Shown here: positions 15,337 through 38,802 of the stretch, one piece after another | How positions within the stretch are numbered: the stretch's first letter is position 1 | Layout: every line of letters starts with the position of its first letter | Virus record (IMG/VR): IMGVR_UViG_3300048008_000449 | Coordinates: 1-64,000 of that record | Length of the DNA stretch: 64,000 bases | Strand: one strand, 5' to 3' | Notes under the pieces: model-generated | Seen by the model: the letters and a program-made list of their open reading frames with translations, nothing else | What the model was told of the DNA's origin: nothing | The model's database searches: none | Position numbers and translations under genes: made by a program

Positions 15337-15338
15337 CC

Positions 15339-15345
15339 ATAAATA
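15339..15345 (+). promoter_or_regulatory. ATAAATA late-type promoter motif in the only clear intergenic gap of the cluster
   Basis: CATAAATAG followed by an AAGGAG RBS and the ATG at 15370. Confidence 0.5.
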
Positions 15346-15369
15346 GTGCTATAACAAGGAGACAATACA

Positions 15370-16035
15370 ATGGATAAATGGAGTGATATAATTTCTGCGA
15401 GAAGTACAACCTTTAGTTGGACTGATGAATTAATACCAAAAGAAGTAATACAAGAAGTATGTGAGGAAGTACATTTATTTTGCCCTAGTAAAAATAGAAA
15501 GATACCTTACATTGTAAACGTAATTAGAAATACAGATTACGATCAGCGTAAAGCCCTACACACAGGCTGTCATAGAAATACTGATCGTACTATAGAAGAA
15601 GACGGTGGTAACCCACAAGTGCTTGCTCCAACATTATTGGTGTTTAGTAAGCGTGACGTAACTGAAGCTGAAACAAAGTTTCAAACTATAGAAAAAAGAG
15701 TTGAAGATGGCATTGCTAATACAGATAACATTGAAATTGGTATGGCAGCATTATCATTCTTATACGGCTTAACATCAAGAGGATGGGATACAGGTTTGTG
15801 TCAGTGTGTTAGAAGTCGTAGTGGAACAGCAAGATTACTTGGAACCAACGGCTCTACTGATTTAATTATTGGTGTAGGTAAACGTAACACAGTAGATTCA
15901 GAAACAGGTGAAACAACAACTTGGCCTAAGTATATGGATCCACGTAACGATAAGCATCGTAAAATTCCATACCCATATGGAATTAGTCCTTATCCTAAAC
16001 CAAACTTTGACGATATATATAAAATAGAATTTTAA
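15370..16035 (+). CDS. Nitroreductase-family flavoprotein
   Basis: IISARSTTFSW, CPSKNRKIPY, DNIEIGMAA..LTSRGWDTGLCQC fit the nitroreductase R.S / PS..N.QP / D.GI..G..TC pattern. Confidence 0.75.
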   Translation: MDKWSDIISARSTTFSWTDELIPKEVIQEVCEEVHLFCPSKNRKIPYIVNVIRNTDYDQRKALHTGCHRNTDRTIEEDGGNPQVLAPTLLVFSKRDVTEAETKFQTIEKRVEDGIANTDNIEIGMAALSFLYGLTSRGWDTGLCQCVRSRSGTARLLGTNGSTDLIIGVGKRNTVDSETGETTTWPKYMDPRNDKHRKIPYPYGISPYPKPNFDDIYKIEF

Positions 16036-16048
16036 GTAAGTGAGATAA

Positions 16049-16612
16049 ATGAAAATAATCGCAACCGGTAATCCAGAATTTGGTGTTGCAAAAGCAATTG
16101 CTGAACGGTTTCCTGAAACAACCTTTGTCAATAGAACTGACTGGGGATATGATTTATGTCAAGATTCATATAAAAAGAAACTAGCAGAAAAGGCTCTTAA
16201 TTATGACGTCTTTATTAACTGTTCCGCACTATGGCAGTATCATCAAACTATGCTACTAGATGTAGTCTACAAAAATGCTTTAAAGAACCTTAAACGACTA
16301 CATATCGTGTCTTTGGGTAGTACAACTGACAGAGCCACCAAAGGTAGCGACTGGCATTATCAACAAGAAAAGAAGGCATTGCGTAGTACAAGCAATGCAT
16401 TGGGCTTAAAAAGCATATGGGCTGGTGGACCAAAAGTAAGTTATGTTACATTTGGAACACTGGAAAATAATGCACATAAGCATCCAGGAAGAACAGTAAT
16501 GAAACTAAACGAAGCCGTAGATATGATAGAATATGTAATTAATATGCCTTATCATTTAAACGTTAACGAACTAAGCATTGACCCAATGCAAACGGATTGG
16601 CCAAATGAATAA
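16049..16612 (+). CDS. Short-chain dehydrogenase/reductase (SDR)
   Basis: KIIATGNPEFGVAKAI Rossmann motif, INCS, SLGS, YQQEK (YxxxK). Confidence 0.8.
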   Translation: MKIIATGNPEFGVAKAIAERFPETTFVNRTDWGYDLCQDSYKKKLAEKALNYDVFINCSALWQYHQTMLLDVVYKNALKNLKRLHIVSLGSTTDRATKGSDWHYQQEKKALRSTSNALGLKSIWAGGPKVSYVTFGTLENNAHKHPGRTVMKLNEAVDMIEYVINMPYHLNVNELSIDPMQTDWPNE

Positions 16613-17780
16613 ATTTTGCTACATGCCTTGGCATGCAATCACGTTGAGTGCAAATGGTGATATTAAGCCATGCTGTCAATTTAGTAATAAAGGTCGTTTA
16701 CCTAATACACAACATGAAACTATTATGGAAAACTTTAATAGTGAACGTATGCAAGAACTACGTAAAGACTTTCTAAAAGGTGTACAACCTAGTGCTTGCA
16801 ATAGTTGTTGGGAGAGAGAAGATTTAGTAGGACAAAGTAGACGCCTGTGGTTTAATAAAAAGTTTATGAAGTTTGATGCTGATTTTATAAATGGCAATAC
16901 ACCTGATACATATGATGTACCAAATCCAAAGTTCTATCAAGCAGATATTAACTTATCAAATGTGTGTAATTTAAAATGCCGTATGTGTGGAAGTTGGGCA
17001 AGTAACAGTTGGTTCGAAGAAGAAATAGCGTTAGCTAAAATAGACAAGCGTTATGAAAAGAATGAAAGAGCAGTTCCATTACAACAATATGGATTAGAAG
17101 ACTTACGCAATATGCTACCTCATTTAAAAGATGTAAAGCGTATAGACTTTAAAGGCGGAGAGCCTATGATGGCTAAACATCATAATCAATTCTTACAATG
17201 GTTGATTGATGAAGATATGACTAACATTGAATTATTTTACACAACAAACGGAACAGTACAAAATCCTAAAATACTGAACTTGTTAAAACAGTTTAAACGT
17301 GTTAGTATATGTTTTAGTATAGAAGGTACTGGAGAACTATATAGATATATTAGAGGTGGCAAATACGAACTAGAAGATTTTGAATTCACACTATCAGAAT
17401 ATGATAAGTTACCAAATGTACAAATTATGTTTAATGTAACATTACAAAATTATAATGTATTTAACTTACCAGACTTGCATTTTTTCTTGCATGAAATGGA
17501 AGATAAATACGAGAGAGTAAGTGCTAACAGTAGTTTCACTACTATCTGTAACAAACCAGCATATTTAAGTCCAATGAACTTGCCAGATGATTTACGAGAT
17601 AAAGCAATTAAAAACTTATCCTTGTTTGAAGATTTTGACAAGTTAGTTGAGAGTATGAAAGCTAGAACATTTAATCCTGAACTATGGGATACATTTATTA
17701 ACTTTACAAACGACTTAGATAAAATGCGAGGAGATAGTGTAGTTAAAGCTGTACCTCAACTAAAGGAATATTTTAAATGA
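16605..17780 (+). CDS. Radical SAM protein with N-terminal SPASM/Twitch-like domain
   Basis: FCYMPWH..KPCC..CNSC; CNLKCRMC; GGEP; TTNG; SIEG..YIRG; start set at ATG 16605. Confidence 0.94.
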   Translation: MNKFCYMPWHAITLSANGDIKPCCQFSNKGRLPNTQHETIMENFNSERMQELRKDFLKGVQPSACNSCWEREDLVGQSRRLWFNKKFMKFDADFINGNTPDTYDVPNPKFYQADINLSNVCNLKCRMCGSWASNSWFEEEIALAKIDKRYEKNERAVPLQQYGLEDLRNMLPHLKDVKRIDFKGGEPMMAKHHNQFLQWLIDEDMTNIELFYTTNGTVQNPKILNLLKQFKRVSICFSIEGTGELYRYIRGGKYELEDFEFTLSEYDKLPNVQIMFNVTLQNYNVFNLPDLHFFLHEMEDKYERVSANSSFTTICNKPAYLSPMNLPDDLRDKAIKNLSLFEDFDKLVESMKARTFNPELWDTFINFTNDLDKMRGDSVVKAVPQLKEYFK

Positions 17781-18499
17781 GAAAACTTGTAGGTATTGAA
17801 GATAATCATGCACCTAAGGATGAGTTACTACGAGTAGAATGGAATTTAGGAAAACGTTGTAATTACAATTGTAGTTACTGTGGTAACGAACTACATAATA
17901 AAACAAGCGAGCATATGCCTTGGGAAGTTTATACTAATACAATAGATAAAATTGTAGAAGCAGCAATGGGCAAAAAGATTAAAATTAGTTTTACAGGCGG
18001 TGAGCCATTTGTACATCCAAAGTTTATTGATATGTTAAAGTATGCTAAAGAAAATGGTGTATATAGATGTAGTGTTACAACAAACGGAAGTCCACCACCT
18101 AAGATATATAAGAAAGCATTGCCATATTTACATTATGTTGTAATCAGTTATCATTTTGAATTTGCATATCATGAGAAAGTTATTAATAACATTACAGGTA
18201 TGTGGAAAGAGATACAAGAATATAGAGCTAAAGATGATTACAAAGGCATGCATGTTCATATTATGGCTTTACCAGGACACTTGCCACAATGGAAAGAAAT
18301 CATAGACGAATTAAAAGAATGTGGAGTTGAGTATACTATAAGAAAAATTAGACCACGTGTTAACATGGATCGTACAGGTTGGAATAAACCATATGCTGAC
18401 GGTATGTTAGGGCAACATCCTAAACACGAAGAAACAGAAAAGTTTGCAGGACAATATTATAGTAATGAAGAAGAGGAGTGGTTAAAAGTAAATGCCTGA
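17777..18499 (+). CDS. Radical SAM protein, core only (paralog of the N-terminal part of 23454-24629)
   Basis: VEWNLGKRCNYNCSYC, SFTGGEPF.HP, TTNG, SYHFE. Confidence 0.92.
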   Translation: MRKLVGIEDNHAPKDELLRVEWNLGKRCNYNCSYCGNELHNKTSEHMPWEVYTNTIDKIVEAAMGKKIKISFTGGEPFVHPKFIDMLKYAKENGVYRCSVTTNGSPPPKIYKKALPYLHYVVISYHFEFAYHEKVINNITGMWKEIQEYRAKDDYKGMHVHIMALPGHLPQWKEIIDELKECGVEYTIRKIRPRVNMDRTGWNKPYADGMLGQHPKHEETEKFAGQYYSNEEEEWLKVNA

Positions 18500-19799
18500 T
18501 ACTAATTATCATAGAGACATATACACCAGAAAACGAAAAGTTAAAGAATGGATGGCTGAACCTGGAAATAATTTTTGTGCATTGCCGTTTATTCATATGG
18601 CAATTGAAGCAGATGGGCAGGTAAGACCTTGTTGTATGGGAGATCCTTTTGACAATATTAATGTTTCAGGCGGTACAATAGAGAGTGCATATAATCACCC
18701 TGAAAGACAAGAATTTGTACAAGCATTTAAAGACAACAAACAACATCCAAAGTGTAATGTATGTTGGAATGCATCATATAGTATACGTAGTAGATATTCA
18801 TCAAATGACATGTCTATAAAATTTACTGAATCAGTAATGGAAGGCAATACCCCAGAAGCATCATTAAAATGGTTAGAAATTAAACCCGGAAACAGATGTA
18901 ATTTAAAATGTAGAATATGTGGGATACACAATAGCAGTACATGGACAAAAGATCATCATATTCTAAAAGAACACAAGAGCGTAAAATTTAAAGATTCATT
19001 TGCATTTAAATATACACAAAAATGTAATTGGGTCGATGATCCTAACTTCTGGAATGATATAAATCAGTTAGATGAAATACAAGATTTACACTTTATGGGT
19101 GGTGAACCTTTTATGGTATTAGAGCATTTTCAGTTACTTGAGAAATTAGTAGCTAGTCGAGATTGTAGTGATATCACTATTAGATATAATACAAATGGTA
19201 CTTATTATCCAACAGCAGAACAATGGAAATTGTATGAGAATTTTAGACAAGTAAAATTTCAAGTAAGTATTGATGATGTTGGTCCAAGATTTGAGTACGC
19301 TCGTAAAGAAGCAAAGTGGGATCTAGTAAAAGAAAATCTAAGAAAGTTTAGAGAAGCAAAACTATTATGCGAAGTTAAAGCAAAAAATGATCCCATCAAT
19401 TATCCAGTAACAAAAGTTAGAGCAAATTTAGACCCAACAGTAAGTATGTTTAATATATTTTACTTAGATGTTATTGAAGAAGAATTTAATAACATGGGTT
19501 GGCCTTTGGGAAGTCATGCAGATCATTATGTCTATAATGGACCAAATAATATAAGAAACTTGCCAGATGAATATAAACATATAATAACTGAAAAATATAA
19601 AGACACTAAAAGTACTTGGATACCAATGGCAGTAGATTATATGTGGACAGCCAAAAGTGATTATGAACAGTGGATGATGTTTGTAAAACAGACTAAAGAA
19701 ACAGACACAGTAAGAAATGAAAGTTTTAGTGATGTATATCCTGAATTTTATAATCTTATAAAAAGTGAATATGATAGGTATGAACCAATAGATGAATAA
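18492..19799 (+). CDS. Radical SAM protein with N-terminal SPASM/Twitch-like domain
   Basis: FCALPFIH..VRPCC..CNVC; CNLKCRIC; GGEPF; YNTNG; SIDD..FEYAR. Confidence 0.94.
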   Translation: MPDTNYHRDIYTRKRKVKEWMAEPGNNFCALPFIHMAIEADGQVRPCCMGDPFDNINVSGGTIESAYNHPERQEFVQAFKDNKQHPKCNVCWNASYSIRSRYSSNDMSIKFTESVMEGNTPEASLKWLEIKPGNRCNLKCRICGIHNSSTWTKDHHILKEHKSVKFKDSFAFKYTQKCNWVDDPNFWNDINQLDEIQDLHFMGGEPFMVLEHFQLLEKLVASRDCSDITIRYNTNGTYYPTAEQWKLYENFRQVKFQVSIDDVGPRFEYARKEAKWDLVKENLRKFREAKLLCEVKAKNDPINYPVTKVRANLDPTVSMFNIFYLDVIEEEFNNMGWPLGSHADHYVYNGPNNIRNLPDEYKHIITEKYKDTKSTWIPMAVDYMWTAKSDYEQWMMFVKQTKETDTVRNESFSDVYPEFYNLIKSEYDRYEPIDE

Positions 19800-20157
19800 T
19801 TTTAAAAATATAATAACACATTACAGTGATGGTACAAGTGAAGAAGATAATGTAAATAATGTAATGGCACGAGATGAAAATGATTTCCGTGGTTGGGAAT
19901 GTTGGGCTGGTGTACAAAATATTACAATAAGCAATACAGGTGATGTGTATAGAGCAATATGCAAAGTAGGAGGCAAACTAGGAAACATATATGATGGATT
20001 TGAAATGCCACTTGAAACAATTATTTGTAACAAGCCTAGATGTATATGTGCCGCTGATGTACAACTATCAAAAGCACAACCAGAGCATGTTACAAAATTA
20101 AGAGTAGGAAAAGATTGGATGGACGATGTTTATAGTTCGGGTATAAAAGATGAGTAA
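19792..20157 (+). CDS. Stand-alone SPASM-like domain protein
   Basis: FRGWECWAG..G.VYR..C..LGNI..GF..C...C.C.AD.Q.SK matches the C-terminus of 23454-24629 (FEGWECSSG..C..LGNI.TGF..C...C.SSADSKIPK). Confidence 0.82.
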   Translation: MNNFKNIITHYSDGTSEEDNVNNVMARDENDFRGWECWAGVQNITISNTGDVYRAICKVGGKLGNIYDGFEMPLETIICNKPRCICAADVQLSKAQPEHVTKLRVGKDWMDDVYSSGIKDE

Positions 20158-21457
20158 ACAAAGCAATTATGAAAAGTTCTACGAGAACGCTATAGGAAAA
20201 ATTGGCAAACTGCCAGTGGATAAAGAATCATTTTGTCCATTGCCATTTGTACATGTAAGCACTATGCCGCATGGAGAAGTTAAACTATGTTGTAGAGCAC
20301 AACCACCAAAGAATGGAAAAAATCCAAATGTTAAAGATGAAGATTTTAATCTAAAAGATTATTGGCACAGTGAGTATATGAATGAGATACGAGATTCCTT
20401 AATCACAGGTGAGAAACATCATCAGTGTAAAAATTGTTGGAAGATGGAAGATAATAACATTGTTAGTTTACGTATGAATAGATTAACAGATTTAATGGAA
20501 ACTCCATCAACCAGAAATGCAGTTGAAAAATATTTAGTAGATAGAGAAGTAGATTTTAAAATTCCACTGATAGAACTTAAACTAAGCAACGTATGTAATT
20601 TTAAATGTCGTATGTGTTGGCCAAAAGACAGTTCAAAGTGGATGCAAGATTGGGATAAAGTAAAACAATTCTATAATAAAAATGACAGAGAATATGTAGA
20701 TGAAATTGTAGACAGTAATGATTTACGTAAATCTAGAGTAATGAACTTGTATGAAAAAGATGAACATTTTGTTCCACAATTATTAGAAGTAATGGAAACT
20801 GTAGAAGAGATTGAATTTGCAGGCGGTGAGCCACTTATGGATCCTATTCATTATCGTGTATTAGACAGTATTCCACATCCAGAAAACGTTACATTAAAAT
20901 ACAGTACAAACCTAAGTATTATGAAAATGGGTAAACATAGTGTTATTGACTTATGGAAAAAATTTAAAAGCATTAAACTAACAATCAGTATTGATGGACA
21001 CAAAGAGCTTAATGCTAAAATAAGAAGAGGGTCTGATTGGGAACTATTAAAAAGTAACATTAACTTAGTTAAGAAAGAATTAACTAATATTGATGTTATC
21101 AAAGGAACTACATGTATTAGCGGAATGAATGCAAAAGAACTAGGCGAAACAGCTGAAGCTATTGTATTCGAATTAGGTATACACTGGCATACAAGCCGTG
21201 TACAATGGCCTGATTTCTTACATGCTAACGTATTACGCCCAACGGAGCTTCAAGGTGGAATAGACGGCTTAAAACGGGTATTTGATAGCTTAAACCTACC
21301 AGAAAGACGTATGGTAGGTAGACGCTTTATGTTTGAAACACATTTAAATGGTGCTATGCATTGGCTACAATCTTGTATTGACAATAACAAGCACGAAGAA
21401 AAATACGAAGCATTTTGTAAGTTTAATCAGACAATTACGGACATTGATGATGACTAA
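20150..21457 (+). CDS. Radical SAM protein with N-terminal SPASM/Twitch-like domain
   Basis: FCPLPFVH..KLCC..CKNC; CNFKCRMC; AGGEP; YSTN; SIDG. Confidence 0.94.
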   Translation: MSKQSNYEKFYENAIGKIGKLPVDKESFCPLPFVHVSTMPHGEVKLCCRAQPPKNGKNPNVKDEDFNLKDYWHSEYMNEIRDSLITGEKHHQCKNCWKMEDNNIVSLRMNRLTDLMETPSTRNAVEKYLVDREVDFKIPLIELKLSNVCNFKCRMCWPKDSSKWMQDWDKVKQFYNKNDREYVDEIVDSNDLRKSRVMNLYEKDEHFVPQLLEVMETVEEIEFAGGEPLMDPIHYRVLDSIPHPENVTLKYSTNLSIMKMGKHSVIDLWKKFKSIKLTISIDGHKELNAKIRRGSDWELLKSNINLVKKELTNIDVIKGTTCISGMNAKELGETAEAIVFELGIHWHTSRVQWPDFLHANVLRPTELQGGIDGLKRVFDSLNLPERRMVGRRFMFETHLNGAMHWLQSCIDNNKHEEKYEAFCKFNQTITDIDDD

Positions 21458-22496
21458 GAAGTTAGCAATATTTGGTAATAGCTTTGGAACGCAACTCGCA
21501 GACCCTGCAAAAAGAGTATGGGAGTTAATGCCAAGCAAAGAGAGAAAAATAGAATTTAGAAAAGCATGGTATAATGAAATGCCTAGCTGGATTAGAATGC
21601 TTAAAAATGAATATGATGTAGTGCATACATTTGCTGTTGGCAATACAGGTATAGATTATAGTTACTTACAATTTTTAAGATATCACAATGAGTATGATAC
21701 TGTAATATTCATAACAACACGAGCATGGACTCATTCACATATACAATATGGTAATCAAGTAGAGGAATGGCGAGGCGAAGCTTCTATACATGATATTGAT
21801 TTTATAAGACCCGAATGGATGTTAGATGAAAGACCAATTAATTGTTACAAAAAGTTCGCTGAAAAAATACTTAAATCAAATAATAAACCAACTGGTCCTG
21901 AAATGCCTATATATGATGAAGATGCAATAAACTTAATGAAAGTATATGTTGACTACGGTACACATGTTGTTCCCAAATTTCCATTTAGAGATCTGTTACA
22001 ATGGGCATCAATGATTGATAATATAATTAGAACTAGACCAGATGTTAAAATGATAAACACTAGTCCAGAAGAGTTTAATGATCTTGGAATTAAAATACCA
22101 ATTGGAAAAATACAAACTTTACATAGAATGGAAAATGATATTTTACTAGGCAAACATGCAGAGTATGAATTTAGAAAAGCTCAGGGTTTACCGTTAGATG
22201 AAGATGGGAAACTTGTTGCTGGATTAGATGATGCATTGCAACAGATGCCTGTTTTAAAATTGTACAGTGATGCTAGAGTAGGACACTTATCAACAGAAGC
22301 ACATAGGTTAATATATGCTGAAGTAAAAGATTTATTAGCATCCAACAATACTTGGTTAGATTTTGATTTAGATGCTATGGTTAAAAAACTTATGGAAATG
22401 AATTTAGATAAAAAGAGATATTTTGTTGCAGAACACAAAGACATTAAATCATGGGCTAAATATAATAACTTATGGATTGATGAGGAAGTAAAATGA
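21450..22496 (+). CDS. SGNH/GDSL-hydrolase-like protein
   Basis: IFGNSFG (block I), FAVGNTG (block II), DARVGHL (D..H); start set at ATG 21450 (21447 also possible). Confidence 0.55.
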   Translation: MTKKLAIFGNSFGTQLADPAKRVWELMPSKERKIEFRKAWYNEMPSWIRMLKNEYDVVHTFAVGNTGIDYSYLQFLRYHNEYDTVIFITTRAWTHSHIQYGNQVEEWRGEASIHDIDFIRPEWMLDERPINCYKKFAEKILKSNNKPTGPEMPIYDEDAINLMKVYVDYGTHVVPKFPFRDLLQWASMIDNIIRTRPDVKMINTSPEEFNDLGIKIPIGKIQTLHRMENDILLGKHAEYEFRKAQGLPLDEDGKLVAGLDDALQQMPVLKLYSDARVGHLSTEAHRLIYAEVKDLLASNNTWLDFDLDAMVKKLMEMNLDKKRYFVAEHKDIKSWAKYNNLWIDEEVK

Positions 22497-23464
22497 GTAT
22501 AGGAATTTTTGGCGATAGTTTTGCAAGGTGTAAAGTTCCATTAATGCATCCTTTAGACCCAAGTAATATTAAAACAGTAATACATACAAATGATGAATAT
22601 ATTAACTTCCAACAAAAAGTAGAAGCACTGATGCCAACTTGGGCTAAGTTATTACCAGATACTACAAATTTTGCAGCAGGCGGTACAGATTTATCTTGGA
22701 GTTTTTTAAAGTTTTTAGAACACCATGAAAAGTATGATAACATTATTTTTGTAGTTACATCGCCAAAAAGAATAACACTAAATGCTCCTCATATGTATGT
22801 GCCAAGTGACAGAGGAAGTAAATTTGGAGTAAATTTGATAACATCAGTAAGTGCTAATCAATCACTTCTTAAAAAAGAAAAGTTTTGTAATTCTGTAAAT
22901 GAAGAACATCTATATGTACGTGATGCTTACGATGCAATTAACAAATGGCAGACTCATATTCAACCAGAGTTTCCTGAAAGAGATTTCTTACATTACGGAA
23001 TATTAATTAATGAGTTGCAACGTATAAGACCAGATATTAAATTAATAAAAGCATTTTGTCACCCTACAGCAGATGATGAATGGAAGATGAAAGATTTTGG
23101 CAAAAAAAATTACTATCCATACAAGCATTTTGATAATATTCCACTTGACAATAAAGCTGAATACCTGCATAATATAGTAAAAGTTGAAGATTCTAATTAT
23201 TTTGAAGAACAAATAGCACAACCTAATAAATGGCATGATTGCAGATCAGGACATATAAGTATTACTTCGCATGTAATATTATATAAAATAATAACAAAGT
23301 GGTTAAAAACTAATGATACATGGCTTAACTTTGATATAGAAGAATTTAAAAATAATAAAGTAGATGCAAATGATAGCTTTATGGATAAAAGTAAATCGTT
23401 ACCAGAATGGCAAGATGCATTCCTACAAAGACGTATTAATGATGGAAAAATAAATGGAAGATAA
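22493..23464 (+). CDS. SGNH/GDSL-hydrolase-like protein, paralog of 21450-22496
   Basis: IFGDSFA, NFAAGGTD..WSF, DCRSGHI; shared FP.RD.L..RPD.K.I and WL.FD blocks. Confidence 0.6.
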   Translation: MSIGIFGDSFARCKVPLMHPLDPSNIKTVIHTNDEYINFQQKVEALMPTWAKLLPDTTNFAAGGTDLSWSFLKFLEHHEKYDNIIFVVTSPKRITLNAPHMYVPSDRGSKFGVNLITSVSANQSLLKKEKFCNSVNEEHLYVRDAYDAINKWQTHIQPEFPERDFLHYGILINELQRIRPDIKLIKAFCHPTADDEWKMKDFGKKNYYPYKHFDNIPLDNKAEYLHNIVKVEDSNYFEEQIAQPNKWHDCRSGHISITSHVILYKIITKWLKTNDTWLNFDIEEFKNNKVDANDSFMDKSKSLPEWQDAFLQRRINDGKINGR

Positions 23465-24629
23465 AGATTTAAAATGGAGTGAATATGATTTCACTAAAAC
23501 ACCGTACGATAAACTAGTACGTGTTGGACAACGAAATATGTTGTATAGAGACATGTTTACTGTTAGCTGGTTAATAGGAAGATTTTGTAATTACAATTGT
23601 AGTTATTGTTGGCCTTATGCTAGAAGTAGTAGAAAAGATCATAGACCAACTGAACTTAATTTAAAAACAATTGATGAGATTAAGCGTCAAGCACGTGAAA
23701 GAGGATTCAATAGTTTTCACTTTAGTTTAAGTGGGGGTGAGCCTACATTCCATCCTGGCTATTTAGATATGTTAAAACATTTAAGTGATGATGCACATAA
23801 TACAAATTATACAAGTGTGCATATGACTTCAAACTGTAGTCGTAATATGAAATGGTTTCAAACATATTGTGATTATGCTAGTAAGTTTCACAGAGCAAGT
23901 ATAACAGCAAGTTTACATGTTGAACACGTAAACACACCTGAAAAAATGCAAGACCTTGCAGACAAATTAATACTATGTCAAGAGCATGATGTACAAGTAA
24001 CAATTAATATGGTTATGGTACCTGCATTATTTGATGAATATTATGACAACGCATTATTCTTCCATAATCAAGGAATCAATGTTACACTAAAACCTCAATC
24101 AGATCCAACAGCAAGTAGAATTGTTGATGGTTATACAGATGAAATGAAAAGAAAATTACACAATGGTATGCCACAACGTAGTTACACTGAAGCTAAAGCA
24201 CAACAAAAGCAATTAGTAACTAGACCTAAGCCTACATTTAAAATTGACCCTGATGATCATTTCCGTAAACAGACAGCATCAGTTCCGTGGAACATGCAGG
24301 TGGAATTTAGAGATGATAAAGGTGATCCGTGGTATATGGATCAAGCTGAAAGATTTAATGCATTTAATTTTAATCAATTTGAAGGTTGGGAATGTAGTAG
24401 TGGATATCGTAGTATAATTATACGTGAACCAGATGGATCAGTTAAAAGGTCTTACTCATGTCATGATCAACCTTTAGGTAATATTGAAACTGGATTTAAA
24501 TTGTTTGATGGTCCAAAAGTATGTACTACAAAATCTTGTGTATCAAGTGCTGATAGTAAAATACCAAAACGAGCACCAGGAACAGCTATGCCCCTTTGGC
24601 CCGGTGATGATACTTTCTTTGAAGATTAA
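23454..24629 (+). CDS. Radical SAM protein with C-terminal SPASM-like domain
   Basis: SWLIGRFCNYNCSYC, SGGEPT.HP, TSN; C-terminal WEC..C..C...C. Confidence 0.93.
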   Translation: MEDKDLKWSEYDFTKTPYDKLVRVGQRNMLYRDMFTVSWLIGRFCNYNCSYCWPYARSSRKDHRPTELNLKTIDEIKRQARERGFNSFHFSLSGGEPTFHPGYLDMLKHLSDDAHNTNYTSVHMTSNCSRNMKWFQTYCDYASKFHRASITASLHVEHVNTPEKMQDLADKLILCQEHDVQVTINMVMVPALFDEYYDNALFFHNQGINVTLKPQSDPTASRIVDGYTDEMKRKLHNGMPQRSYTEAKAQQKQLVTRPKPTFKIDPDDHFRKQTASVPWNMQVEFRDDKGDPWYMDQAERFNAFNFNQFEGWECSSGYRSIIIREPDGSVKRSYSCHDQPLGNIETGFKLFDGPKVCTTKSCVSSADSKIPKRAPGTAMPLWPGDDTFFED

Positions 24630-34573: not shown

Positions 34574-34972
34574 TTAATTTTTTGTTGCGTCAGTTACTTC
34601 TGGTAATTTAAATGCGTTTGCATTTTCTTCTACTTTTTCCATGTCAAAGTTAATGCTTTCTCCACAACCACAACTACTTGCCGCTGATGGATTAACAATT
34701 TCTAACATAGTACCCATAAGGTCTTGTTTAAGTTCAAGTGTTGTGCCTACTAAAAACATAATACTTGAGCTGTCAACTGCCATCTTTTTTCCGTTATCCA
34801 TAATTATAACATGATCTGCTTTCGTGTCAAGTTCTGATTCTTCTTTTAGTTTCCATTCGTAACTAAAACCTGCACACCCACCTCCACGTAAACCTAATAC
34901 TGGAATCTTATTATCATTTGATTCACTTATACCTGTTAAGTGATTCATAGCTTTTTCTGTAATTTTAATCAT
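34574..34972 (-). CDS. iscA: HesB/IscA/SufA A-type Fe-S carrier protein
   Basis: GGGCAGFSY and NPSA..SCGCGES (three conserved Cys). Confidence 0.9.
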   Translation of the reverse strand: MIKITEKAMNHLTGISESNDNKIPVLGLRGGGCAGFSYEWKLKEESELDTKADHVIIMDNGKKMAVDSSSIMFLVGTTLELKQDLMGTMLEIVNPSAASSCGCGESINFDMEKVEENANAFKLPEVTDATKN

Positions 34973-35496
34973 TCTTTTGCTCCGTACAATTGGACCACGG
35001 GTAAATTATCGAGGCCCTTGTTGAGATATTCCAAGTTAACAAGTGTTACTGCCCCAATAACTTGGGCACCTGTTTGCTCAACCAATCTCTTAGTAGCTAA
35101 CATGCTACCTCCGGTTGCTATTAGGTCATCTGCAATTAATACTCTGCTAGTATGACCAAGTATACCTTCTTGTAATGTTAGTGTATCACTTCCATATTCA
35201 AGTTCGTATGTTTCTTCTAATAGTACTCCTGGGTATTTAGCACCTTTTTTACGAACCATTGTAAAAGGTAATAACATTTCTTGAGCAAGTGCTGAACCTA
35301 TTACAAATCCTCTACTCTCAATACCCACAATATGAGTAATGTACGACCCATCAAAATCTTCTTCGCATTGTGTTGCTAGAGATCTTACACAATCTCCCCA
35401 TACGTTACTACTAAACAAACTATTTAAGTCGTAAAAGTTTATACCTTCGACAGGATAATCTGGTACTGTTCTTATAAAATTTTTAATCTGTTTCAT
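34969..35496 (-). CDS. apt: Adenine phosphoribosyltransferase
   Basis: PDYP..GI.F.D, GIESRGF, VRKKG, YELEYG, DDLIATGGS. Confidence 0.94.
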   Translation of the reverse strand: MKQIKNFIRTVPDYPVEGINFYDLNSLFSSNVWGDCVRSLATQCEEDFDGSYITHIVGIESRGFVIGSALAQEMLLPFTMVRKKGAKYPGVLLEETYELEYGSDTLTLQEGILGHTSRVLIADDLIATGGSMLATKRLVEQTGAQVIGAVTLVNLEYLNKGLDNLPVVQLYGAKE

Positions 35497-35767
35497 CTAT
35501 TGTATCCACATGTATTCCTTTTACCCAATGATACCACTCACGCCATTTACGTTTTGCACTTACATGGGTTGGGTCTTTTGCCCAGTCTGCGACATCTTCT
35601 CTACTCTTCCAAGTCGTAATTGTAATTTCAATGTCGCCAATTTCTTCACTTGTTAAACTAATAAAACCAGGATGCTTTTCACCCAAGTCTCTAACTCTAG
35701 TTACGTAGTCTTTATATTCGTCATTAAAGTTTTTAATTTTTGCTATAAAGAATACTTTTACTGCCAT
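35483..35767 (-). CDS. Antibiotic biosynthesis monooxygenase (ABM) domain protein, heme-degrading HmoA/IsdG-like group
   Basis: PGFIS..ITITTWKS.E.V..W..DP.H..AK....EWY. Confidence 0.7.
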   Translation of the reverse strand: MAVKVFFIAKIKNFNDEYKDYVTRVRDLGEKHPGFISLTSEEIGDIEITITTWKSREDVADWAKDPTHVSAKRKWREWYHWVKGIHVDTIDETD

Positions 35768-35952
35768 TACATTACATGCTTTTTAAGTTTATCCATAATA
35801 GCACTGAACTCAGAAATCTCTTCGTTTAGTTCAGCAATTTCTTCATTAAGATCAGCAATACGAATTTCGCTGTCTTCAATTTTACGCTGTCTATCACGTA
35901 CCTTACGTTCTCTATCACGAATCTTTTTCTTATATGTATTTAACTCTGCCAT
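35767..35952 (-). CDS. Small coiled-coil protein
   Basis: Heptad-like charged repeats (RDRERKVRDRQRK, LNEEIAELNEEISE). Confidence 0.65.
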   Translation of the reverse strand: MAELNTYKKKIRDRERKVRDRQRKIEDSEIRIADLNEEIAELNEEISEFSAIMDKLKKHVM

Positions 35953-35954
35953 AA

Positions 35955-36299
35955 TTACTCCTGTTCCGGTGGATGAAAATCGTCTTCATTTGGAAAATCA
36001 TAATACCCACTAGGGTCTGAAGTGTAGTATGGATCGTTATACATAGGATCGTCTTCACTTGTAACACCTTTAATTTCAGGAATGAAATGCATTAGTGTTG
36101 ACTCAACACCTTGTTTAAGTGTTTCAGTACTACTAGCACAACCACTACAACTTCCACTCATCTGAGTGTGAAGAATTCCTGTTTCTTCATTAAAGTTAAT
36201 TATATTAATTTGCCCACCATGTTGTGCTACATTTGGATTAATATATTCTTCCATAACTTTATCAATTTGTTCAAGCAACTCTTCTTTAGACTTACTCAT
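35955..36299 (-). CDS. NifU C-terminal domain protein (NfuA-like Fe-S carrier)
   Basis: I.P.V..HGG.I, MSGSCSGCASS..TLKQGVE (CxxC). Confidence 0.92.
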   Translation of the reverse strand: MSKSKEELLEQIDKVMEEYINPNVAQHGGQINIINFNEETGILHTQMSGSCSGCASSTETLKQGVESTLMHFIPEIKGVTSEDDPMYNDPYYTSDPSGYYDFPNEDDFHPPEQE

Positions 36300-36444
36300 A
36301 TTTGTACCTCGTTTTTCTAATATCCATCATATGGATACTACGTTCAATTTTATCTTCTTTACGTCTAGCAAATTTGTAACCAGCAAAAAAAGATAGTGCC
36401 ATTACTGCTCCAATAGCTAGCAAGTGCCATACTAAAAATGTCAT
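36292..36444 (-). CDS. 50-aa single-TM protein (absent from ORF track)
   Basis: MTFLVWHLLAIGAVMALSFFAGYKFARRKEDK..; GGAG RBS; overlaps both neighbours. Confidence 0.6.
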   Translation of the reverse strand: MTFLVWHLLAIGAVMALSFFAGYKFARRKEDKIERSIHMMDIRKTRYKYE

Positions 36445-36608
36445 ACTGTTTCTCCTTTGGTTATCACCTCTTCAATTCGGTGATGTGGATATGCCTTCGG
36501 GCGTATCTCTTTAATCTTTTCTAAATATTTCTGTGCTTCTGTTTCTGAATGAAATCGTGCAACAGAAATTTCGTCGTGTATTCTAGGTGTATAAATTATA
36601 TCGTACAT
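36441..36608 (-). CDS. Small hypothetical protein
   Basis: Start set at MYDII (36608) after an AAGG RBS. Confidence 0.55.
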   Translation of the reverse strand: MYDIIYTPRIHDEISVARFHSETEAQKYLEKIKEIRPKAYPHHRIEEVITKGETV

Positions 36609-36618
36609 ATTATTTCCT

Positions 36619-37182
36619 TTATAAAACGTGTTCATGTTCAATGATATGCCAATACATTAATGCTTCATAGCCAAACCATAATCCAAATACTAAAAATGCA
36701 AAACGTGTAACTTTAAATAACACATGAGCTGATACTTTATTTTTAATTAATGGAAACATTCCAACGACTATTGCAATTGCAACTGATGCAGACATCCAAC
36801 TGTATAGTGTATTGTTACTTGCCATAAACATAAACATAAATATCTCAGAACTTTCTCTAGCAAAAATAACAAAGATTGTAACTAATGCGGCGATACTAGT
36901 ACCTGATCCCATTTTTTGAATACTATCAACAATTTGCTGTCCCATTGTGTGTGAAGTAAAATATAAGTAAATCATCATTGCTGATAAAAACCCATACATT
37001 AACCATTCATAAGGTTCTAGCAAGTTTCCTAGTTGCCAACCTAATACAAATCCTACAATAATTCCAGCAATAGCAGATGCATACATGCTCCAATTTAATT
37101 TGATGAATGTTGTAATCATCAATGTTATAAACATTATCTCTAATGCTTCTCTTCCTACTAATATAAACGGTGCAATAAGCAT
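36619..37182 (-). CDS. FTR1/EfeU-family iron permease (short)
   Basis: Two RExxE motifs (GREALE, ARESSE) in a highly hydrophobic protein; start set at ATG 37182 after AGGAG. Confidence 0.8.
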   Translation of the reverse strand: MLIAPFILVGREALEIMFITLMITTFIKLNWSMYASAIAGIIVGFVLGWQLGNLLEPYEWLMYGFLSAMMIYLYFTSHTMGQQIVDSIQKMGSGTSIAALVTIFVIFARESSEIFMFMFMASNNTLYSWMSASVAIAIVVGMFPLIKNKVSAHVLFKVTRFAFLVFGLWFGYEALMYWHIIEHEHVL

Positions 37183-37183
37183 G

Positions 37184-37528
37184 TTAATCTCCTTCTCCTG
37201 GTTTTTCAGATAGTAATTCACGTTTGTTTGGTTTATCTTTCCATTCTGCAGCATCTGCAGGTGGATCTTTCATTGTAGTTATGTTTGGCCATTTTTCAGA
37301 CATATCGGTATTGACTTTCATCCAATAGGCTAGTTCTGTGCCTTCGATAGCACCATCAGCAACAATTGCATCTACTGGACATTCGGGTTCACATACACCA
37401 CAGTCAATACATTCATCTGGATTTATTACTAGAAAGTTTTCACCTTCATAGAAACAATCAACAGGACAAACTTCAACGCAGTCAGTATGTTTACATTTAA
37501 TACAATTTTCTGTTACTAAATATGTCAT
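37184..37528 (-). CDS. fdxA: 7Fe (3Fe-4S/4Fe-4S) ferredoxin, FdxA type
   Basis: [38 protein letters not shown]. Confidence 0.95.
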
Positions 37529-37825
37529 TTATACTCCTAAAATTAATCTTGTATCTTCGCTCATTTTATCTGGTCCAAAAGGCGGATCAAATGTTATTTT
37601 AACATCGCATGTTTCGACGTTATCTACTTTTGTTACTGCTTCGTGGACTTCCGCTATGATCTCGTCTGCGGCAGGACAGAACGCACTAGTTAATGTCATA
37701 ACAATATCAACGTGTGCTTTATTAATATTTATTTCATAAATTAAACCCAAATCATATACGTTTATACTGATCTCTGGGTCATATACTACTTTTAAATTTT
37801 CAATAATCTTTTCTTTATCTATCAT
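37529..37825 (-). CDS. DUF59 / SufT-like Fe-S cluster assembly protein
   Basis: VYDPEISINVYDLGLIY, MTLTSAFCP, TFDPP..P; start set at ATG 37825. Confidence 0.9.
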   Translation of the reverse strand: MIDKEKIIENLKVVYDPEISINVYDLGLIYEININKAHVDIVMTLTSAFCPAADEIIAEVHEAVTKVDNVETCDVKITFDPPFGPDKMSEDTRLILGV

Positions 37826-38802
37826 ATATTTTCTATTAGTGGTTTTATTCTTTTCTTTAATTGTTTCGCCCATAACACATGGCCTTTTTCATTAAGGTGA
37901 TTACATTTACATTGATGCGACATAGATATTGGTCCATCAACTTGTAGCCATCCTCCTTCATCGGATGTTCCATCAAGACAATTAAGTCGTTCTCTTATTG
38001 ATTGATCAAAGTTAATAAGGTGATCAAATAATGTACTAGTATCACCTAGCATCATTTTTCCAATCTTGTACCAAATACTTCTAGCATCAAGTGATTCCCA
38101 TAAAAATTCTACACCAGAACTGACAGCTATGTTTTTAATAGCTTCTATCTTTATCAGATCATCTAAACAAGCCGCTGGCCCCATTCCATCAAGTATGTGT
38201 ACTTGTTTATAAGTGTCTAATATTTTTTTAGCATATGCTATCTCACTAGGAGTTAATGGATGCTCTAAAGGTTGCCAAAACTTCTTTGTTACACCTCTTC
38301 TCCAATCCTGCATACTAGCAGATTGATATAATGCATTGCATATATCATTATCACCCCAATGATCAACTAGACCTCTGCCCCAACGTTCATTTAGTTGTAA
38401 ATAAGATTCCAATGAAGCTCTACCAAATTGATTATTACTACCTGTTTTTGGGTCAGTAAATACATAAGGTCTATTAGCAACAGAATTATAAGGTACTGCA
38501 CTTTGTCCATTAAGAAGTCTAGCTTCTAATACCATTAATTTACAGTTTGGATCTTTAAGTACACCTCTAGTAACCAACTCGTTTGTTGCTTGTAATAGTT
38601 CTGAGTTATTACACCCAGGTAAACCTATCTTAATACATTCTAATCCTAGTTGTTGAGCTACCTGTTCGTGAGCAGTTTTTCCACTTATTACGCCGTCCTC
38701 ATAATCGTCACAACATCCAAAAGTGTGACTAGTACCTAATGCTACCATAAACGGCTTATTAGGTACTACCAAAGGTGGTTTATTGTCTAGCTTTCTACTC
38801 AT
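37822..38802 (-). CDS. SGNH-hydrolase-like protein
   Basis: ALGTSHTFG, GLPGCNN, CNHLNEKGH. Confidence 0.6.
   Translation of the reverse strand: MSRKLDNKPPLVVPNKPFMVALGTSHTFGCCDDYEDGVISGKTAHEQVAQQLGLECIKIGLPGCNNSELLQATNELVTRGVLKDPNCKLMVLEARLLNGQSAVPYNSVANRPYVFTDPKTGSNNQFGRASLESYLQLNERWGRGLVDHWGDNDICNALYQSASMQDWRRGVTKKFWQPLEHPLTPSEIAYAKKILDTYKQVHILDGMGPAACLDDLIKIEAIKNIAVSSGVEFLWESLDARSIWYKIGKMMLGDTSTLFDHLINFDQSIRERLNCLDGTSDEGGWLQVDGPISMSHQCKCNHLNEKGHVLWAKQLKKRIKPLIENI

What the first reader, a model, noticed from the sequence alone, without database searches (positions are those of the whole stretch)
34574..37825. Phage-borne iron uptake and Fe-S maturation module apparently supporting the rSAM arsenal
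Seen: IscA/HesB, NifU-C, FTR1 permease (two RExxE), FdxA 7Fe ferredoxin, DUF59/SufT and an ABM (heme-oxygenase-like group) within 3.3 kb. Known: A-type carriers, Nfu and SufT deliver [4Fe-4S] to apo-proteins including rSAM enzymes, and ferredoxins can reduce them. Inference: the phage brings its own iron import, cluster delivery and electron donor for 13 multi-cluster enzymes, forming a genome-level system with the 1-24.6 kb cluster. No cysteine desulfurase or scaffold (IscS/SufBCD) is seen here, so de novo assembly is probably the host's.
Basis: partly seen in the sequence, partly recalled or inferred. Interest (0 to 1): 0.75.

Follow-up and report, generated by a model that had tools for sequence, protein, structure and literature searches.

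The report
Phage iron-sulfur cluster support module
A marine jumbo phage carries a tightly packed, conserved block of genes for iron-sulfur cluster carriers, a ferredoxin and a phage-only iron-permease-like protein, close to about 20 radical-SAM enzymes; the idea was already published for other marine phages, so this is a richer example, not a new kind.

Summary

The contig is a real jumbo myovirus, 205 kb and about 56% complete.

- An IscU scaffold and an Fpr-like reductase are encoded elsewhere in the genome. No cysteine desulfurase is present.
- The block is syntenic in relatives whose permease is only 42-66% identical.
- Every 100+ kb viral contig carrying this permease has 9-25 radical-SAM genes, against 0-4 in four complete jumbo or huge phages without the permease.
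- In two relatives DUF59 sits directly upstream of radical-SAM runs.

Weak points:
- All carriers seem to belong to one clade, so co-occurrence is not independent evidence.
- Equally rSAM-rich relatives lack Nfu, DUF59 or IscU.
- Iron import is inferred only from motifs and predicted fold.
- "Heme-oxygenase-like" is unsupported.

Nishimura et al. 2017 already proposed this logic for marine phages with an A-type carrier, DUF59 and 12 rSAMs. I rate it a new variant of a known kind, of moderate interest.

The parts
37529..37873 (-). DUF59 / SufT-like Fe-S maturation factor, 114 aa, Cys66 and Cys89
   Evidence: Pfam PF01883, E 6e-17, 62 bits against a cut-off of 23.5. NCBIfam SUF_assoc gives 112.6 bits, below the equivalog cut-off of 143.4. 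Homologs lie directly upstream of rSAM runs in G050 and G038.
37184..37528 (-). FdxA-type 7Fe ferredoxin ([3Fe-4S][4Fe-4S]) with DUF3470 tail, 114 aa
   Evidence: NCBIfam FdxA_Protbact equivalog, 160.7 bits against a cut-off of 135. Pfam Fer4 + DUF3470. Nine Cys in the FdI pattern. The nearest cellular homologs are Alphaproteobacteria at 60-69% identity. It abuts DUF59 with no gap.
36619..37182 (-). Minimal six-helix FTR1/EfeU-like permease, 187 aa, two RExxE motifs (residues 11-15 and 109-113), His-rich C-terminus. The longer ORF reaches 37254.
   Evidence: Pfam FTR1 match is partial, 32.9 bits. RBS and start site. The two halves align as an internal repeat. Glu12, Glu15, Arg109, Glu110 and Glu113 are invariant in 9 family members. 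AF2 model has pLDDT 75, and the best Foldseek hits are EfeU with TM 0.58-0.65 over residues 5-176. Only 19 representative clusters match among 1.8 billion proteins. None was found in 185k cellular genomes.
36441..36641 (-). 66-aa ORF of unknown function
   Evidence: ORF list. Conserved at 81% in L002 only. No significant Pfam hit.
36292..36444 (-). 50-aa ORF with one hydrophobic N-terminal helix
   Evidence: ORF list. 98% conserved in L002. No Pfam hit.
35955..36299 (-). Nfu-type Fe-S carrier (NifU C-terminal domain alone), 114 aa, CxxC at 51/54
   Evidence: Pfam PF01106, E 1e-21. It matches only the C-terminal half of NfuA. Conserved in G041, G051, G043, G017 and L092-L094.
35767..35952 (-). 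61-aa coiled-coil ORF
   Evidence: Only sub-threshold coiled-coil Pfam hits. Conserved in L002 at 74%.
35483..35767 (-). ABM-fold (YqjZ/DUF3291-like) protein, 94 aa, function unknown
   Evidence: Pfam DUF3291, E 2e-5. PDB 2GO8 YqjZ at E 3.6e-5, IsdG at E 0.3. Atlas finds viral ABM clusters. It is absent from L002 and lies directly after the permease in L101/L102.
34969..35496 (-). Adenine phosphoribosyltransferase (Apt), 175 aa
   Evidence: NCBIfam NF002636 equivalog, 161.2 bits against a cut-off of 125. It stays inside the block in L002, L092-L094, L101, L102, G041, G051 and G043, and lies next to the permease in L116, L122, L126-L128 and L132.
34574..34972 (-). A-type Fe-S carrier (IscA/SufA/ErpA family), 132 aa, Cys33/101/103
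   Evidence: Pfam PF01521, E 7e-11. TIGR00049, 71.3 bits against a cut-off of 58.8. Homologs occur in 9 of 16 larger (40 kb or more) permease-bearing contigs by Pfam.
1059..24629 (+). Presumed clients: radical-SAM gene cluster with 12 Pfam rSAM matches, 7 of them with a SPASM domain
   Evidence: The cluster continues 15.7 kb beyond the window start in the identical contig G001, with 3 more rSAM genes.

Best explanation
The block is a phage-encoded Fe-S cofactor supply line, working in an infected, probably alphaproteobacterial, marine cell.

Shown: the genes encode members of the A-type carrier, Nfu, DUF59 and FdxA families with intact ligand residues. They are packed as one translationally coupled string, and the string is kept in diverged relatives.

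Inferred mechanism:
1. The host's cysteine desulfurase provides sulfur.
2. The phage IscU, encoded elsewhere in the genome, assembles clusters.
3. The phage A-type carrier, Nfu and the SufT-like DUF59 protein pass [4Fe-4S] clusters to the flood of phage apo-proteins. Foremost among these are the 20 or more radical-SAM/SPASM enzymes. The phage also encodes mononuclear and di-iron enzymes (TauD-like, desaturase).
4. FdxA, recharged from NADPH by the phage Fpr-like reductase, supplies the low-potential electron for SAM cleavage.
5. The six-helix FTR1-like permease raises iron influx across the inner membrane.
6. Apt, which always travels with the block, may recycle adenine released from the rSAM by-product 5'-deoxyadenosine.
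For: - Family membership and ligand residues.
- Gene packing: gaps or overlaps of -23 to +9 nt between all ten genes, from the coordinates. An RBS-backed start lies 1 nt after the fdxA stop.
- Clustering is beyond chance, P about 5e-5.
- Synteny is kept at 66%, 53-56%, 44% and 42% permease identity: L002, L101/L102, L092-L094 and G041. The Fdx-Nfu-Apt-IscA-MazG core is kept in G051/G043 even though the permease has moved.
- The rest of the chain is in the same genome: IscU and Fpr-like.
- rSAM load: 19 in G000, plus 3 more in G001. All eight distinct 100+ kb permease-bearing contigs have 9-25. PA5oct, Vibrio phage 2.275.O, Phosso and LR756504 have 0, 0, 4 and 0.
- DUF59 is the first gene of same-strand rSAM runs in G050 and G038.
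- Contigs from four marine metatranscriptome runs match the block at 99% or more.
- Established biochemistry, from memory and not tested here: NfuA and A-type carriers deliver [4Fe-4S] to rSAM enzymes such as LipA and MiaB. SufT is needed when Fe-S demand is high. The Azotobacter FdI-FPR pair is a specific redox couple.
- The same reasoning is published for other marine phages (PMC5332604).
Against: - No functional test exists.
- The two near-complete relatives each lack part of the set: G058 (342 kb, 20 rSAM) has no Nfu, DUF59 or IscU; G050 (323 kb, 19 rSAM) has DUF59 but no Nfu, no IscU and no Pfam-level A-type carrier.
- A huge phage with an A-type carrier has no rSAM at all.
- Nfu also occurs in cyanophage P-SSM2/P-SSM5.
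- All permease carriers with a terminase belong to one clade, TerL 58-61% identical, so the co-occurrence may be one evolutionary event.
- The comparison phages are distant, and most contigs are fragments.
- Nucleotide-metabolism genes (Apt, MazG, RpiB, PRPP synthetase) are interleaved. The block may simply be part of an 18-kb array of auxiliary genes.
- The permease fails the EfeU equivalog test (22.7 against 255 bits) and has no visible oxidase or periplasmic partner.
- RNA-library coverage cannot exclude carried-over DNA.
Confidence: 0.55

Rival explanations
1. These are general-purpose auxiliary genes. They are independent host-derived Fe-S and iron homeostasis genes that keep host and phage metabolism running under iron scarcity or oxidative stress in surface seawater. 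They sit together only because this phage lineage stores its auxiliary genes in one co-directional array. There is no specific tie to the radical-SAM enzymes.
For: - Fe-S assembly genes (sufA/iscA, iscU, nifU, sufE) are common in marine viromes and phages of many types (PMC8940887; PMC5332604). P-SSM2/P-SSM5 carry NifU-like genes.
- An A-type carrier occurs in a 636-kb phage with no rSAM.
- The block is interleaved with Apt and flanked by MazG, RpiB, ClpP, PRPP synthetase, TauD-like oxygenases and a desaturase.
- Its composition varies among equally rSAM-rich relatives.
Against: - The same gene order is kept down to 42% permease identity.
- The permease family is seen only in rSAM-rich phages.
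- DUF59 directly heads rSAM runs in two lineages.
- An enzyme set that needs one to three [4Fe-4S] clusters each is the largest obvious Fe-S sink in these genomes.
Confidence: 0.3
2. FdxA and the permease work as a pair. The ferredoxin is the cytoplasmic redox partner of the FTR1-like channel, as the polyferredoxin FtrD is proposed to be for FtrC in FtrABCD systems. It would handle the electron of the Fe2+/Fe3+ step during transport, rather than, or besides, feeding rSAM enzymes.
For: - fdxA is immediately upstream of the permease, 1 nt apart, in G000, and stands directly before it in L002, L101, L102, G041 and L092-L094.
- FdxA is retained in 7 of 8 large permease-bearing contigs.
- FTR1-family transport is normally coupled to a redox partner (established knowledge, from memory).
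Against: - The two genes are 4 to over 100 kb apart in G050, G058, G036, G051 and G043.
- FdxA is soluble, whereas FtrD is membrane-bound.
- The complex prediction gave no answer, score 0.00, which the tool says is evidence neither way.
Confidence: 0.15
3. The FTR1-like protein is not an iron importer. It is a six-helix LysE-superfamily protein that could export a metal as MntP does, carry another cation (the family also moves lead), or serve a membrane role unrelated to metal supply.
For: - EfeU equivalog score is 22.7 against a 255-bit cut-off.
- It has six predicted helices, whereas canonical members are described as having seven (the figure seven is from memory).
- After EfeU, the next Foldseek hits are MntP efflux pumps and RhtB at similar TM scores.
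- No EfeO/EfeB/P19/multicopper-oxidase gene lies next to it.
- No solved structure is available for comparison.
Against: - Both RExxE motifs, the signature of FTR1-type iron permeases, are invariant across the family, apart from one Arg.
- The top nine structural hits are EfeU, and yeast Ftr1 and Aspergillus FtrA also match.
- Its neighbours are iron-using or iron-handling genes in three different contexts: Fe-S carriers; desaturases + TauD + rSAM; Fdx + QueD.
Confidence: 0.25

Closest known systems
Marine 'T4-like' environmental viral genomes with Fe-S assembly genes and many radical-SAM genes (Nishimura et al. 2017, mSphere, PMC5332604)
   Same: Uncultured marine myovirus genomes carry an A-type carrier and/or IscU, DUF59 ('PaaD'), ClpP and up to 12 radical-SAM/SPASM genes. 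The authors draw the same conclusion: the viral assembly proteins serve virally encoded Fe-S proteins.
   Different: Their lists show no hit to 'ferredoxin' or 'permease' in the supplementary tables, and the text read does not describe Fe-S genes forming one conserved block. Here the set also has Nfu, FdxA, an Fpr-like reductase and an FTR1-like permease, arranged as a syntenic block, with 19-25 rSAM genes. The example genome named in the paper's text is listed at 183,387 bp beside the value 54.4, which I read as %GC; if so it is a different lineage from this 34% GC phage.
Bacterial late-acting Fe-S trafficking factors: A-type carriers (IscA/SufA/ErpA), NfuA and SufT
   Same: Same families with the same ligand residues. 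These act after the scaffold and deliver [4Fe-4S] clusters to apo-proteins, including rSAM enzymes (established knowledge, from memory).
   Different: They are encoded by a virus. Nfu is the C-terminal domain alone, without the degenerate A-type N-domain of NfuA. The A-type carrier and DUF59 fall below every equivalog cut-off (ErpA, SufA, IscA, SUF_assoc), so the subtype is undefined. They are not in an isc or suf operon, and no desulfurase is present.
FTR1/EfeU iron permeases (iron/lead transporter family; EfeUOB, Ftr1-Fet3, FtrABCD, cFtr1-P19)
   Same: Two RExxE motifs at the start of helix 1 and helix 4. The predicted fold superposes on the first six helices of EfeU, TM 0.58-0.65.
   Different: It has 187 aa and six helices rather than roughly 280 aa and seven. 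The profile match is far below family-specific cut-offs. No oxidase, EfeO, EfeB or P19 partner gene is adjacent. The family is tiny, and every genomic context examined was a viral or phage-like contig.
Azotobacter-type ferredoxin I (FdxA) with NADPH:ferredoxin reductase (Fpr)
   Same: FdxA passes the proteobacterial equivalog model and keeps all nine cysteines. An Fpr-like gene is in the same genome and in 4 of 8 large relatives.
   Different: The Fpr-like protein scores 114.8 against a 390-bit equivalog cut-off. The cellular pair is linked to oxidative-stress regulation rather than to rSAM reduction (from memory). Here the two genes are about 90 kb apart.
NifU-like genes of cyanophages P-SSM2 and P-SSM5
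   Same: A single-domain Nfu-type gene in a cultured marine myovirus, 40% identical over the domain.
   Different: In the cyanophages, the Nfu search shows only the NifU-like gene itself, and searches with the A-type carrier, FdxA, DUF59 and the permease found no match in those records.

Membership tests
A-type Fe-S carrier (IscA/SufA/ErpA, PF01521/TIGR00049) | Profile score over the curated cut-off | tested here: met
   PF01521 42.7 against 26.3 bits. TIGR00049 71.3 against 58.8 bits. The ErpA, SufA and IscA equivalog cut-offs are not reached, so the subtype is open.
A-type Fe-S carrier (IscA/SufA/ErpA, PF01521/TIGR00049) | Three cluster-ligand cysteines (C-x(n)-C-x-C) | tested here: met
   Cys33, Cys101 and Cys103 are the only cysteines.
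Nfu-type carrier (NifU C-terminal domain, PF01106) | Domain over the cut-off, with the CxxC motif | tested here: met
   76.9 against 27 bits. CxxC at 51/54.
NfuA (TIGR03341) | Two-domain build: degenerate A-type N-domain plus Nfu C-domain | tested here: not met
   Only model positions 104-181 of 190 match, 67 against 269 bits. The N-domain is absent.
DUF59 / SufT (PF01883; TIGR02945 SUF_assoc) | DUF59 domain over the Pfam cut-off | tested here: met
   62.1 against 23.5 bits. A cysteine is present in the domain, at position 66.
DUF59 / SufT (PF01883; TIGR02945 SUF_assoc) | Equivalog-level score or suf-operon context | tested here: not met
   112.6 against 143.4 bits. No SufBD or SufS anywhere in the contig.
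Proteobacterial FdxA 7Fe ferredoxin (NF045490) | Equivalog score, 3Fe+4Fe cysteine pattern and DUF3470 tail | tested here: met
   160.7 against 135 bits. DUF3470 E 6e-17. Nine Cys at 9, 12, 17, 21, 25, 40, 43, 46, 50.
FTR1/EfeU iron permease (PF03239; NF041756) | Two RExxE motifs in transmembrane helices | tested here: met
   Motifs at 11-15 and 109-113. The glutamates are invariant in 9 homologs.
FTR1/EfeU iron permease (PF03239; NF041756) | Full-length profile match | tested here: not met
   The Pfam match covers only profile positions 118-174 of 284, although the score (32.9) exceeds the cut-off of 25.3. EfeU equivalog 22.7 against 255 bits.
FTR1/EfeU iron permease (PF03239; NF041756) | Fold of the permease core | tested here: inconclusive
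   The AF2 model (pLDDT 75) is closest to predicted EfeU models, TM 0.58-0.65, E about 1e-3. MntP and RhtB follow closely. No solved structure exists. Six helices are predicted, whereas the canonical count, from memory, is seven.
FTR1/EfeU iron permease (PF03239; NF041756) | Partner ferroxidase, peroxidase or periplasmic iron-binding protein (Fet3, EfeO/EfeB, P19, FtrA/B) | not tested
   None is among the neighbouring genes. The whole genome was not scanned for these families.
FTR1/EfeU iron permease (PF03239; NF041756) | Iron transport activity | not testable with these tools
   Needs uptake or complementation assays.
IsdG/HmoA-type heme-degrading monooxygenase | Significant similarity to IsdG-family enzymes, with the catalytic Asn-Trp-His | tested here: not met
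   IsdG matches only at E 0.3. The best solved relative is YqjZ, of unknown function, at E 3.6e-5. By eye the Trp and His positions have counterparts, but the N-terminal Asn does not. The ABM fold itself is supported.
Complete Isc or Suf assembly system | Cysteine desulfurase plus scaffold | tested here: not met
   IscU is present and passes TIGR01999, 210 against 192 bits. There is no Aminotran_5 and no SufBD in the 205 kb held. The contig is about 56% of the genome, so absence is not proven.

The most novel reading that the evidence does not exclude
The six-helix RExxE protein would be a virus-specific, minimal iron importer, possibly redox-coupled to the co-translated 7Fe ferredoxin. A clade of marine jumbo phages would install it in the host membrane to pull in the iron needed for 20 or more multi-cluster radical-SAM enzymes. 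This would be the first phage-encoded metal uptake system. It would also be a complete viral 'iron in, cluster built, cluster delivered, cluster reduced' chain that lacks only the desulfurase.
Probability: 0.25. Interest if true: 0.75.

Novelty: new variant of a known kind. Interest (0 to 1): 0.5.

Why it matters
Iron limits much of the surface ocean, and radical-SAM/SPASM enzymes are among the most iron-costly proteins. If a widespread clade of marine jumbo phages carries its own cluster scaffold, carriers, reductant chain and perhaps an iron permease, infected cells become a distinct iron sink. The phage's large and still unexplained radical-SAM chemistry would then be buffered from the host's Fe-S economy.

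The block also gives a compact, testable set of partner proteins for reconstituting phage rSAM enzymes in vitro. It singles out a tiny permease family, so far seen only in viral or phage-like contigs, whose transport function is easy to test. The general idea is already published, so the gain lies in completeness and testability rather than in concept.

Tried and rejected
I used the representative library, the Atlas and pattern scans instead.
- TerL-anchored relatives were meant as a clade-internal control. They proved uninformative. In G000 the terminase lies 125 kb from the block, and those fragments do not reach that region. Their lack of permease and IscA says nothing.
- The alignment of all nine permease homologs was too diverged for a locus scan. 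A six-member subset worked.
- A scan of 185k cellular genomes for the permease found nothing. This argues against a recent host origin but depends on two peptide patterns.
- The FdxA-permease complex prediction gave no answer.
- A sequence search of the PDB with the permease profile gave only chance MFS hits. Foldseek against the PDB gave no hit with E at or below 0.001.
- I looked for a phage 5'-deoxyadenosine nucleosidase (PF01048) and a SAM synthetase (PF02773) to extend the 'rSAM support' idea. Neither is in the contig.
- Promoter and terminator scans do not delimit the block. Promoter-like sites are no more frequent than in shuffles.
- No Rfam element lies in 24-44 kb.
- The reading that this is a bacterial contig rather than a phage is rejected.

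Full report
**What is there.** Between 34574 and 37873, ten ORFs lie on the - strand. Gaps or overlaps between them run from -23 to +9 nt. In order of transcription they are:
1. DUF59/FeS_assembly_P, 37529-37873.
2. A ferredoxin with Fer4 and DUF3470, 37184-37528.
3. An FTR1-like membrane protein.
4. Two small ORFs of 66 and 50 aa.
5. A NifU C-terminal domain protein, 35955-36299.
6. A 61-aa coiled coil.
7. A 94-aa ABM-fold protein, 35483-35767.
8. A phosphoribosyltransferase, 34969-35496.
9. An IscA/HesB protein, 34574-34972.

Assignments come, and NCBIfam sharpens them:
- The ferredoxin passes the proteobacterial FdxA equivalog model (160.7 against 135 bits).
- The carrier passes TIGR00049.
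- The transferase passes an adenine phosphoribosyltransferase equivalog.
- DUF59 resembles SUF-associated/SufT proteins but stays below the equivalog cut-off.
- The Nfu protein matches only the C-terminal half of NfuA.

Ligand residues are intact: three Cys in the carrier, CxxC in Nfu, and all nine Cys of the FdI pattern in FdxA.

The permease most likely starts at the ATG at 37182, which has an AGGAG 6 nt upstream and lies 1 nt after the fdxA stop. That gives 187 aa and, by my reading of the sequence and the model's helices, six hydrophobic helices. RExxE sits at the start of helices 1 and 4, and the two halves align as an internal repeat.

**The genome.** The window is the first 64 kb of a 204,772-bp IMG/VR virus record, judged 56% complete.
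- It encodes a family-B DNA polymerase, a large terminase and a tail sheath.
- The nearest cultured terminase is that of Pseudomonas jumbo phage PA5oct, at 55.6% identity.
- It carries nine tRNAs and a permuted alpha-proteobacterial tmRNA (Rfam RF01849, 123 bits).
- The closest cellular FdxA homologs are almost all Alphaproteobacteria, at 60-69% identity.

An alphaproteobacterial host is therefore likely, though not shown.

**Radical-SAM load.** Pfam finds 19 rSAM matches in the contig:
- 12 in 1-24.6 kb;
- one at 54.9 kb;
- six between 65 and 97 kb.

An identical 79.7-kb contig, G001, runs 15.7 kb past the window start and adds three more. A SPASM domain is detected in seven cluster members, in six of them N-terminal to the rSAM core.

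- The genome encodes a canonical IscU scaffold at G000:129439-129858. It scores NifU_N E 2e-50 and passes TIGR01999.
- It also encodes an Fpr-like ferredoxin-NADP reductase at 126281-127060.
- No Aminotran_5 desulfurase and no SufBD are present in the 205 kb.

Only the sulfur-mobilising step is left to the host, as far as the held 56% shows.

**Is it a unit?**
- Five of the contig's seven Fe-S/iron-handling genes fall within ten consecutive genes out of 286, P about 5e-5.
- The order DUF59-Fdx-permease-Nfu-(x)-Apt-(x)-IscA-MazG recurs in L002 (permease 66% identical, no ABM gene), in L092-L094 (44%) and in G041 (42%, no DUF59).
- L101/L102 (53-56%) have DUF59-Fdx-permease-ABM ... Apt-IscA without Nfu.
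- In G051 and G043, Fdx-Nfu-Apt-IscA-MazG stays together while the permease lies elsewhere.

So a conserved core exists, with the permease, DUF59, ABM and Nfu as variable members. Promoter and terminator scans do not set the block apart from the 18-kb co-directional array it sits in. That array also holds two TauD-like oxygenases, a fatty-acid desaturase, QueD, MazG, RpiB, ClpP, PRPP synthetase and an ExbB-like gene.

**The permease family.**
- An exhaustive HMMER search of 1.8 billion representatives found only 19 clusters.
- The glutamates of both motifs, and the second Arg, are invariant.
- tblastn finds it in none of 50,697 GenBank phage records.
- A pattern scan finds it in none of 185,579 cellular species genomes.
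- It is found in 36 IMG/VR loci.
- The AlphaFold model (pLDDT 75) is nearest to predicted EfeU structures, TM 0.58-0.65 over residues 5-176. Next come yeast and fungal Ftr1, then MntP and RhtB.
- No solved structure matches.

It is therefore FTR1-like in motif and fold, but it fails full-length and equivalog tests. Its direction and substrate remain inferred. A 33%-identical member sits between two desaturases, a TauD and an rSAM gene, which again are iron enzymes.

Every permease-bearing viral contig of 100 kb or more is rSAM-rich:

| Contig | rSAM matches |
|---|---|
| G036 | 9 |
| G041 | 25 |
| G043 | 13 |
| G050 | 19 |
| G051 | 16 |
| G058 | 20 |
| G060 | 10 |
| G062 | 19 |

- G062 is a near copy of G058.
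- With G000 included, this comes to 8.1 rSAM per 100 kb. The four comparison phages give 0.23 per 100 kb: three complete jumbo phages related by terminase, and one huge phage that has an A-type carrier.
- In G050 and G038, DUF59 is the first gene of a same-strand run of rSAM genes.

These results favour a link, with three limits:
1. G050, G058 and G062 share a 58-61% identical terminase with G000. The carriers look like one clade, and the association may be one event.
2. The comparison phages are distant. The closer TerL-anchored fragments do not reach the relevant region, so they are uninformative.
3. The two near-complete relatives show that parts of the set are dispensable: G058 lacks Nfu, DUF59 and IscU, and G050 lacks Nfu, IscU and a Pfam-level A-type carrier.

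Among eight large contigs, tblastn finds the following:

| Gene | Contigs with a match (of 8) |
|---|---|
| IscA-like | 8 (one weak) |
| FdxA | 7 |
| Apt | 6 |
| Nfu | 4 |
| Fpr-like | 4 |
| IscU | 3 |
| DUF59 | 2 |
| ABM | 2 |

**Mechanism.** The most likely reading is a viral Fe-S supply line:
1. Host desulfurase supplies sulfur.
2. Phage IscU assembles clusters.
3. The phage A-type carrier, Nfu and DUF59 deliver them to phage apo-enzymes.
4. NADPH, the Fpr-like reductase and FdxA provide the reducing electron.
5. The permease possibly adds iron.

Only family membership, residue conservation, packing, synteny and co-occurrence are shown. Every transfer step is inferred from the known roles of the families (from memory: NfuA and A-type carriers load LipA and MiaB; SufT matters at high Fe-S demand; Azotobacter FdI pairs with FPR).

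Apt's constant presence may reflect salvage of adenine from 5'-deoxyadenosine, the rSAM by-product. The phage has no nucleosidase or SAM synthetase of its own, and plain nucleotide salvage explains Apt equally well.

An alternative reading pairs FdxA with the permease, as in FtrC/FtrD. The complex prediction gave no answer on this.

**Expression.** Contigs from four marine metatranscriptome runs, from at least three studies, match parts of 34.1-38.9 kb at 99% identity or more. Coverage is strongly uneven, up to 24x over DUF59 and its upstream gene. This is compatible with transcription in the sea, but carried-over DNA was not excluded.

**Prior knowledge.**
- Fe-S assembly genes are established viral auxiliary genes (PMC8940887).
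- Nishimura et al. 2017 (PMC5332604) described marine T4-like genomes with an A-type carrier, IscU, DUF59/PaaD, glutaredoxin, ClpP and up to 12 rSAM genes. They concluded that the viral assembly proteins serve viral Fe-S proteins.
- P-SSM2 and P-SSM5 carry NifU-like genes.
- Limited literature searches found no report of an FTR1-like permease or an FdxA/Fpr pair in phages.

**Verdict.** This is a new variant of a known kind. The genuinely new element is the permease family, so far seen only in viral or phage-like contigs, and the near-complete chain.

Noticed in passing
window 4530-5780, 8260-9519, 14095-15336, 16578-17780, 18492-19799, 20150-21457: Six radical-SAM proteins have the SPASM auxiliary-cluster domain at the N-terminus, before the rSAM core. 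This is the reverse of the usual order; only 3469-4530 has it at the C-terminus.
   Followed up: no
G000:104633-104979 (outside the window; L005:633-979, - strand): The phage encodes a permuted alpha-proteobacterial tmRNA (Rfam alpha_tmRNA, 123 bits; tag ANDNYSPEMALAA) and nine tRNAs at 100.9-103.9 kb and 128.8-131.3 kb. Together with the alphaproteobacterial FdxA affinity, this hints at the host class.
   Followed up: partly
G000:129439-129858 and 126281-127060 (outside the window; L006): A canonical IscU scaffold with the LPPVK motif and an Fpr-like ferredoxin-NADP reductase are encoded about 90 kb from the block, among tRNA genes.
   Followed up: yes
window 26739-27182 and 26147-26746 (- strand): A MotA/TolQ/ExbB-family protein (E 3.8e-7) and a following 199-aa protein are conserved as a pair in all eight large related contigs. 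The pair lies next to IscA in G058, and within 1.4 kb of it in G060. By eye, the G058 and G060 homologs of the second protein begin with a hydrophobic stretch. Whether the pair has any role in TonB-type uptake is unknown.
   Followed up: partly
G058:74925-75464 and G060:46513-47049: A 178-179-aa protein sits directly upstream of IscA in two distant relatives. I suspected an HscB-like co-chaperone from its N-terminus. This was not tested with a profile, and no homolog was found in G000.
   Followed up: no
window 32872-33378 (- strand): A free-standing 168-aa ORF whose homolog in relatives carries a DNA_pol3_alpha Pfam hit. It appears to be an isolated fragment of a Pol III alpha-like protein, conserved in L002, L092-L094, G041 and others.
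   Followed up: no
window 34830-34803 (- strand), inside the IscA gene: A perfect 12/12 sigma-70 consensus (TTGACA, 16 nt, TATAAT with an upstream TG) points towards mazG. A second perfect site at 42892-42919 (+) lies in the divergent intergenic region that heads both gene arrays. Overall, promoter-like sites are not enriched.
   Followed up: no
window 39564-40313, 40857-41798, 41801-42523, 12323-13096: Two TauD-family Fe(II)/2-oxoglutarate oxygenases, a fatty-acid desaturase and an Asp/Asn beta-hydroxylase-like protein. These are non-Fe-S iron enzymes that add to the phage's iron demand.
   Followed up: no
G001 (IMGVR_UViG_3300046750_000365) 63969-79713; L091: An identical contig from another sample extends 15.7 kb upstream of the window start and holds three further rSAM genes. 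The rSAM cluster is therefore cut by the contig end.
   Followed up: partly
L090 (G017) 12160-13949: A relative with 74% terminase identity carries six tandem paralogs of about 95-110 aa, each ending in a conserved 'KMMLRLQYG'-like tail. They lie a few kb upstream of four paralogous ~295-aa genes and a lone Nfu gene at the contig end.
   Followed up: no
window 37822-38802 (- strand): A 326-aa protein directly upstream of DUF59 overlaps it by 52 nt. It has no Pfam or NCBIfam match, is conserved in L002 (68%), and has the highest coverage in the RNA-library contigs.
   Followed up: no
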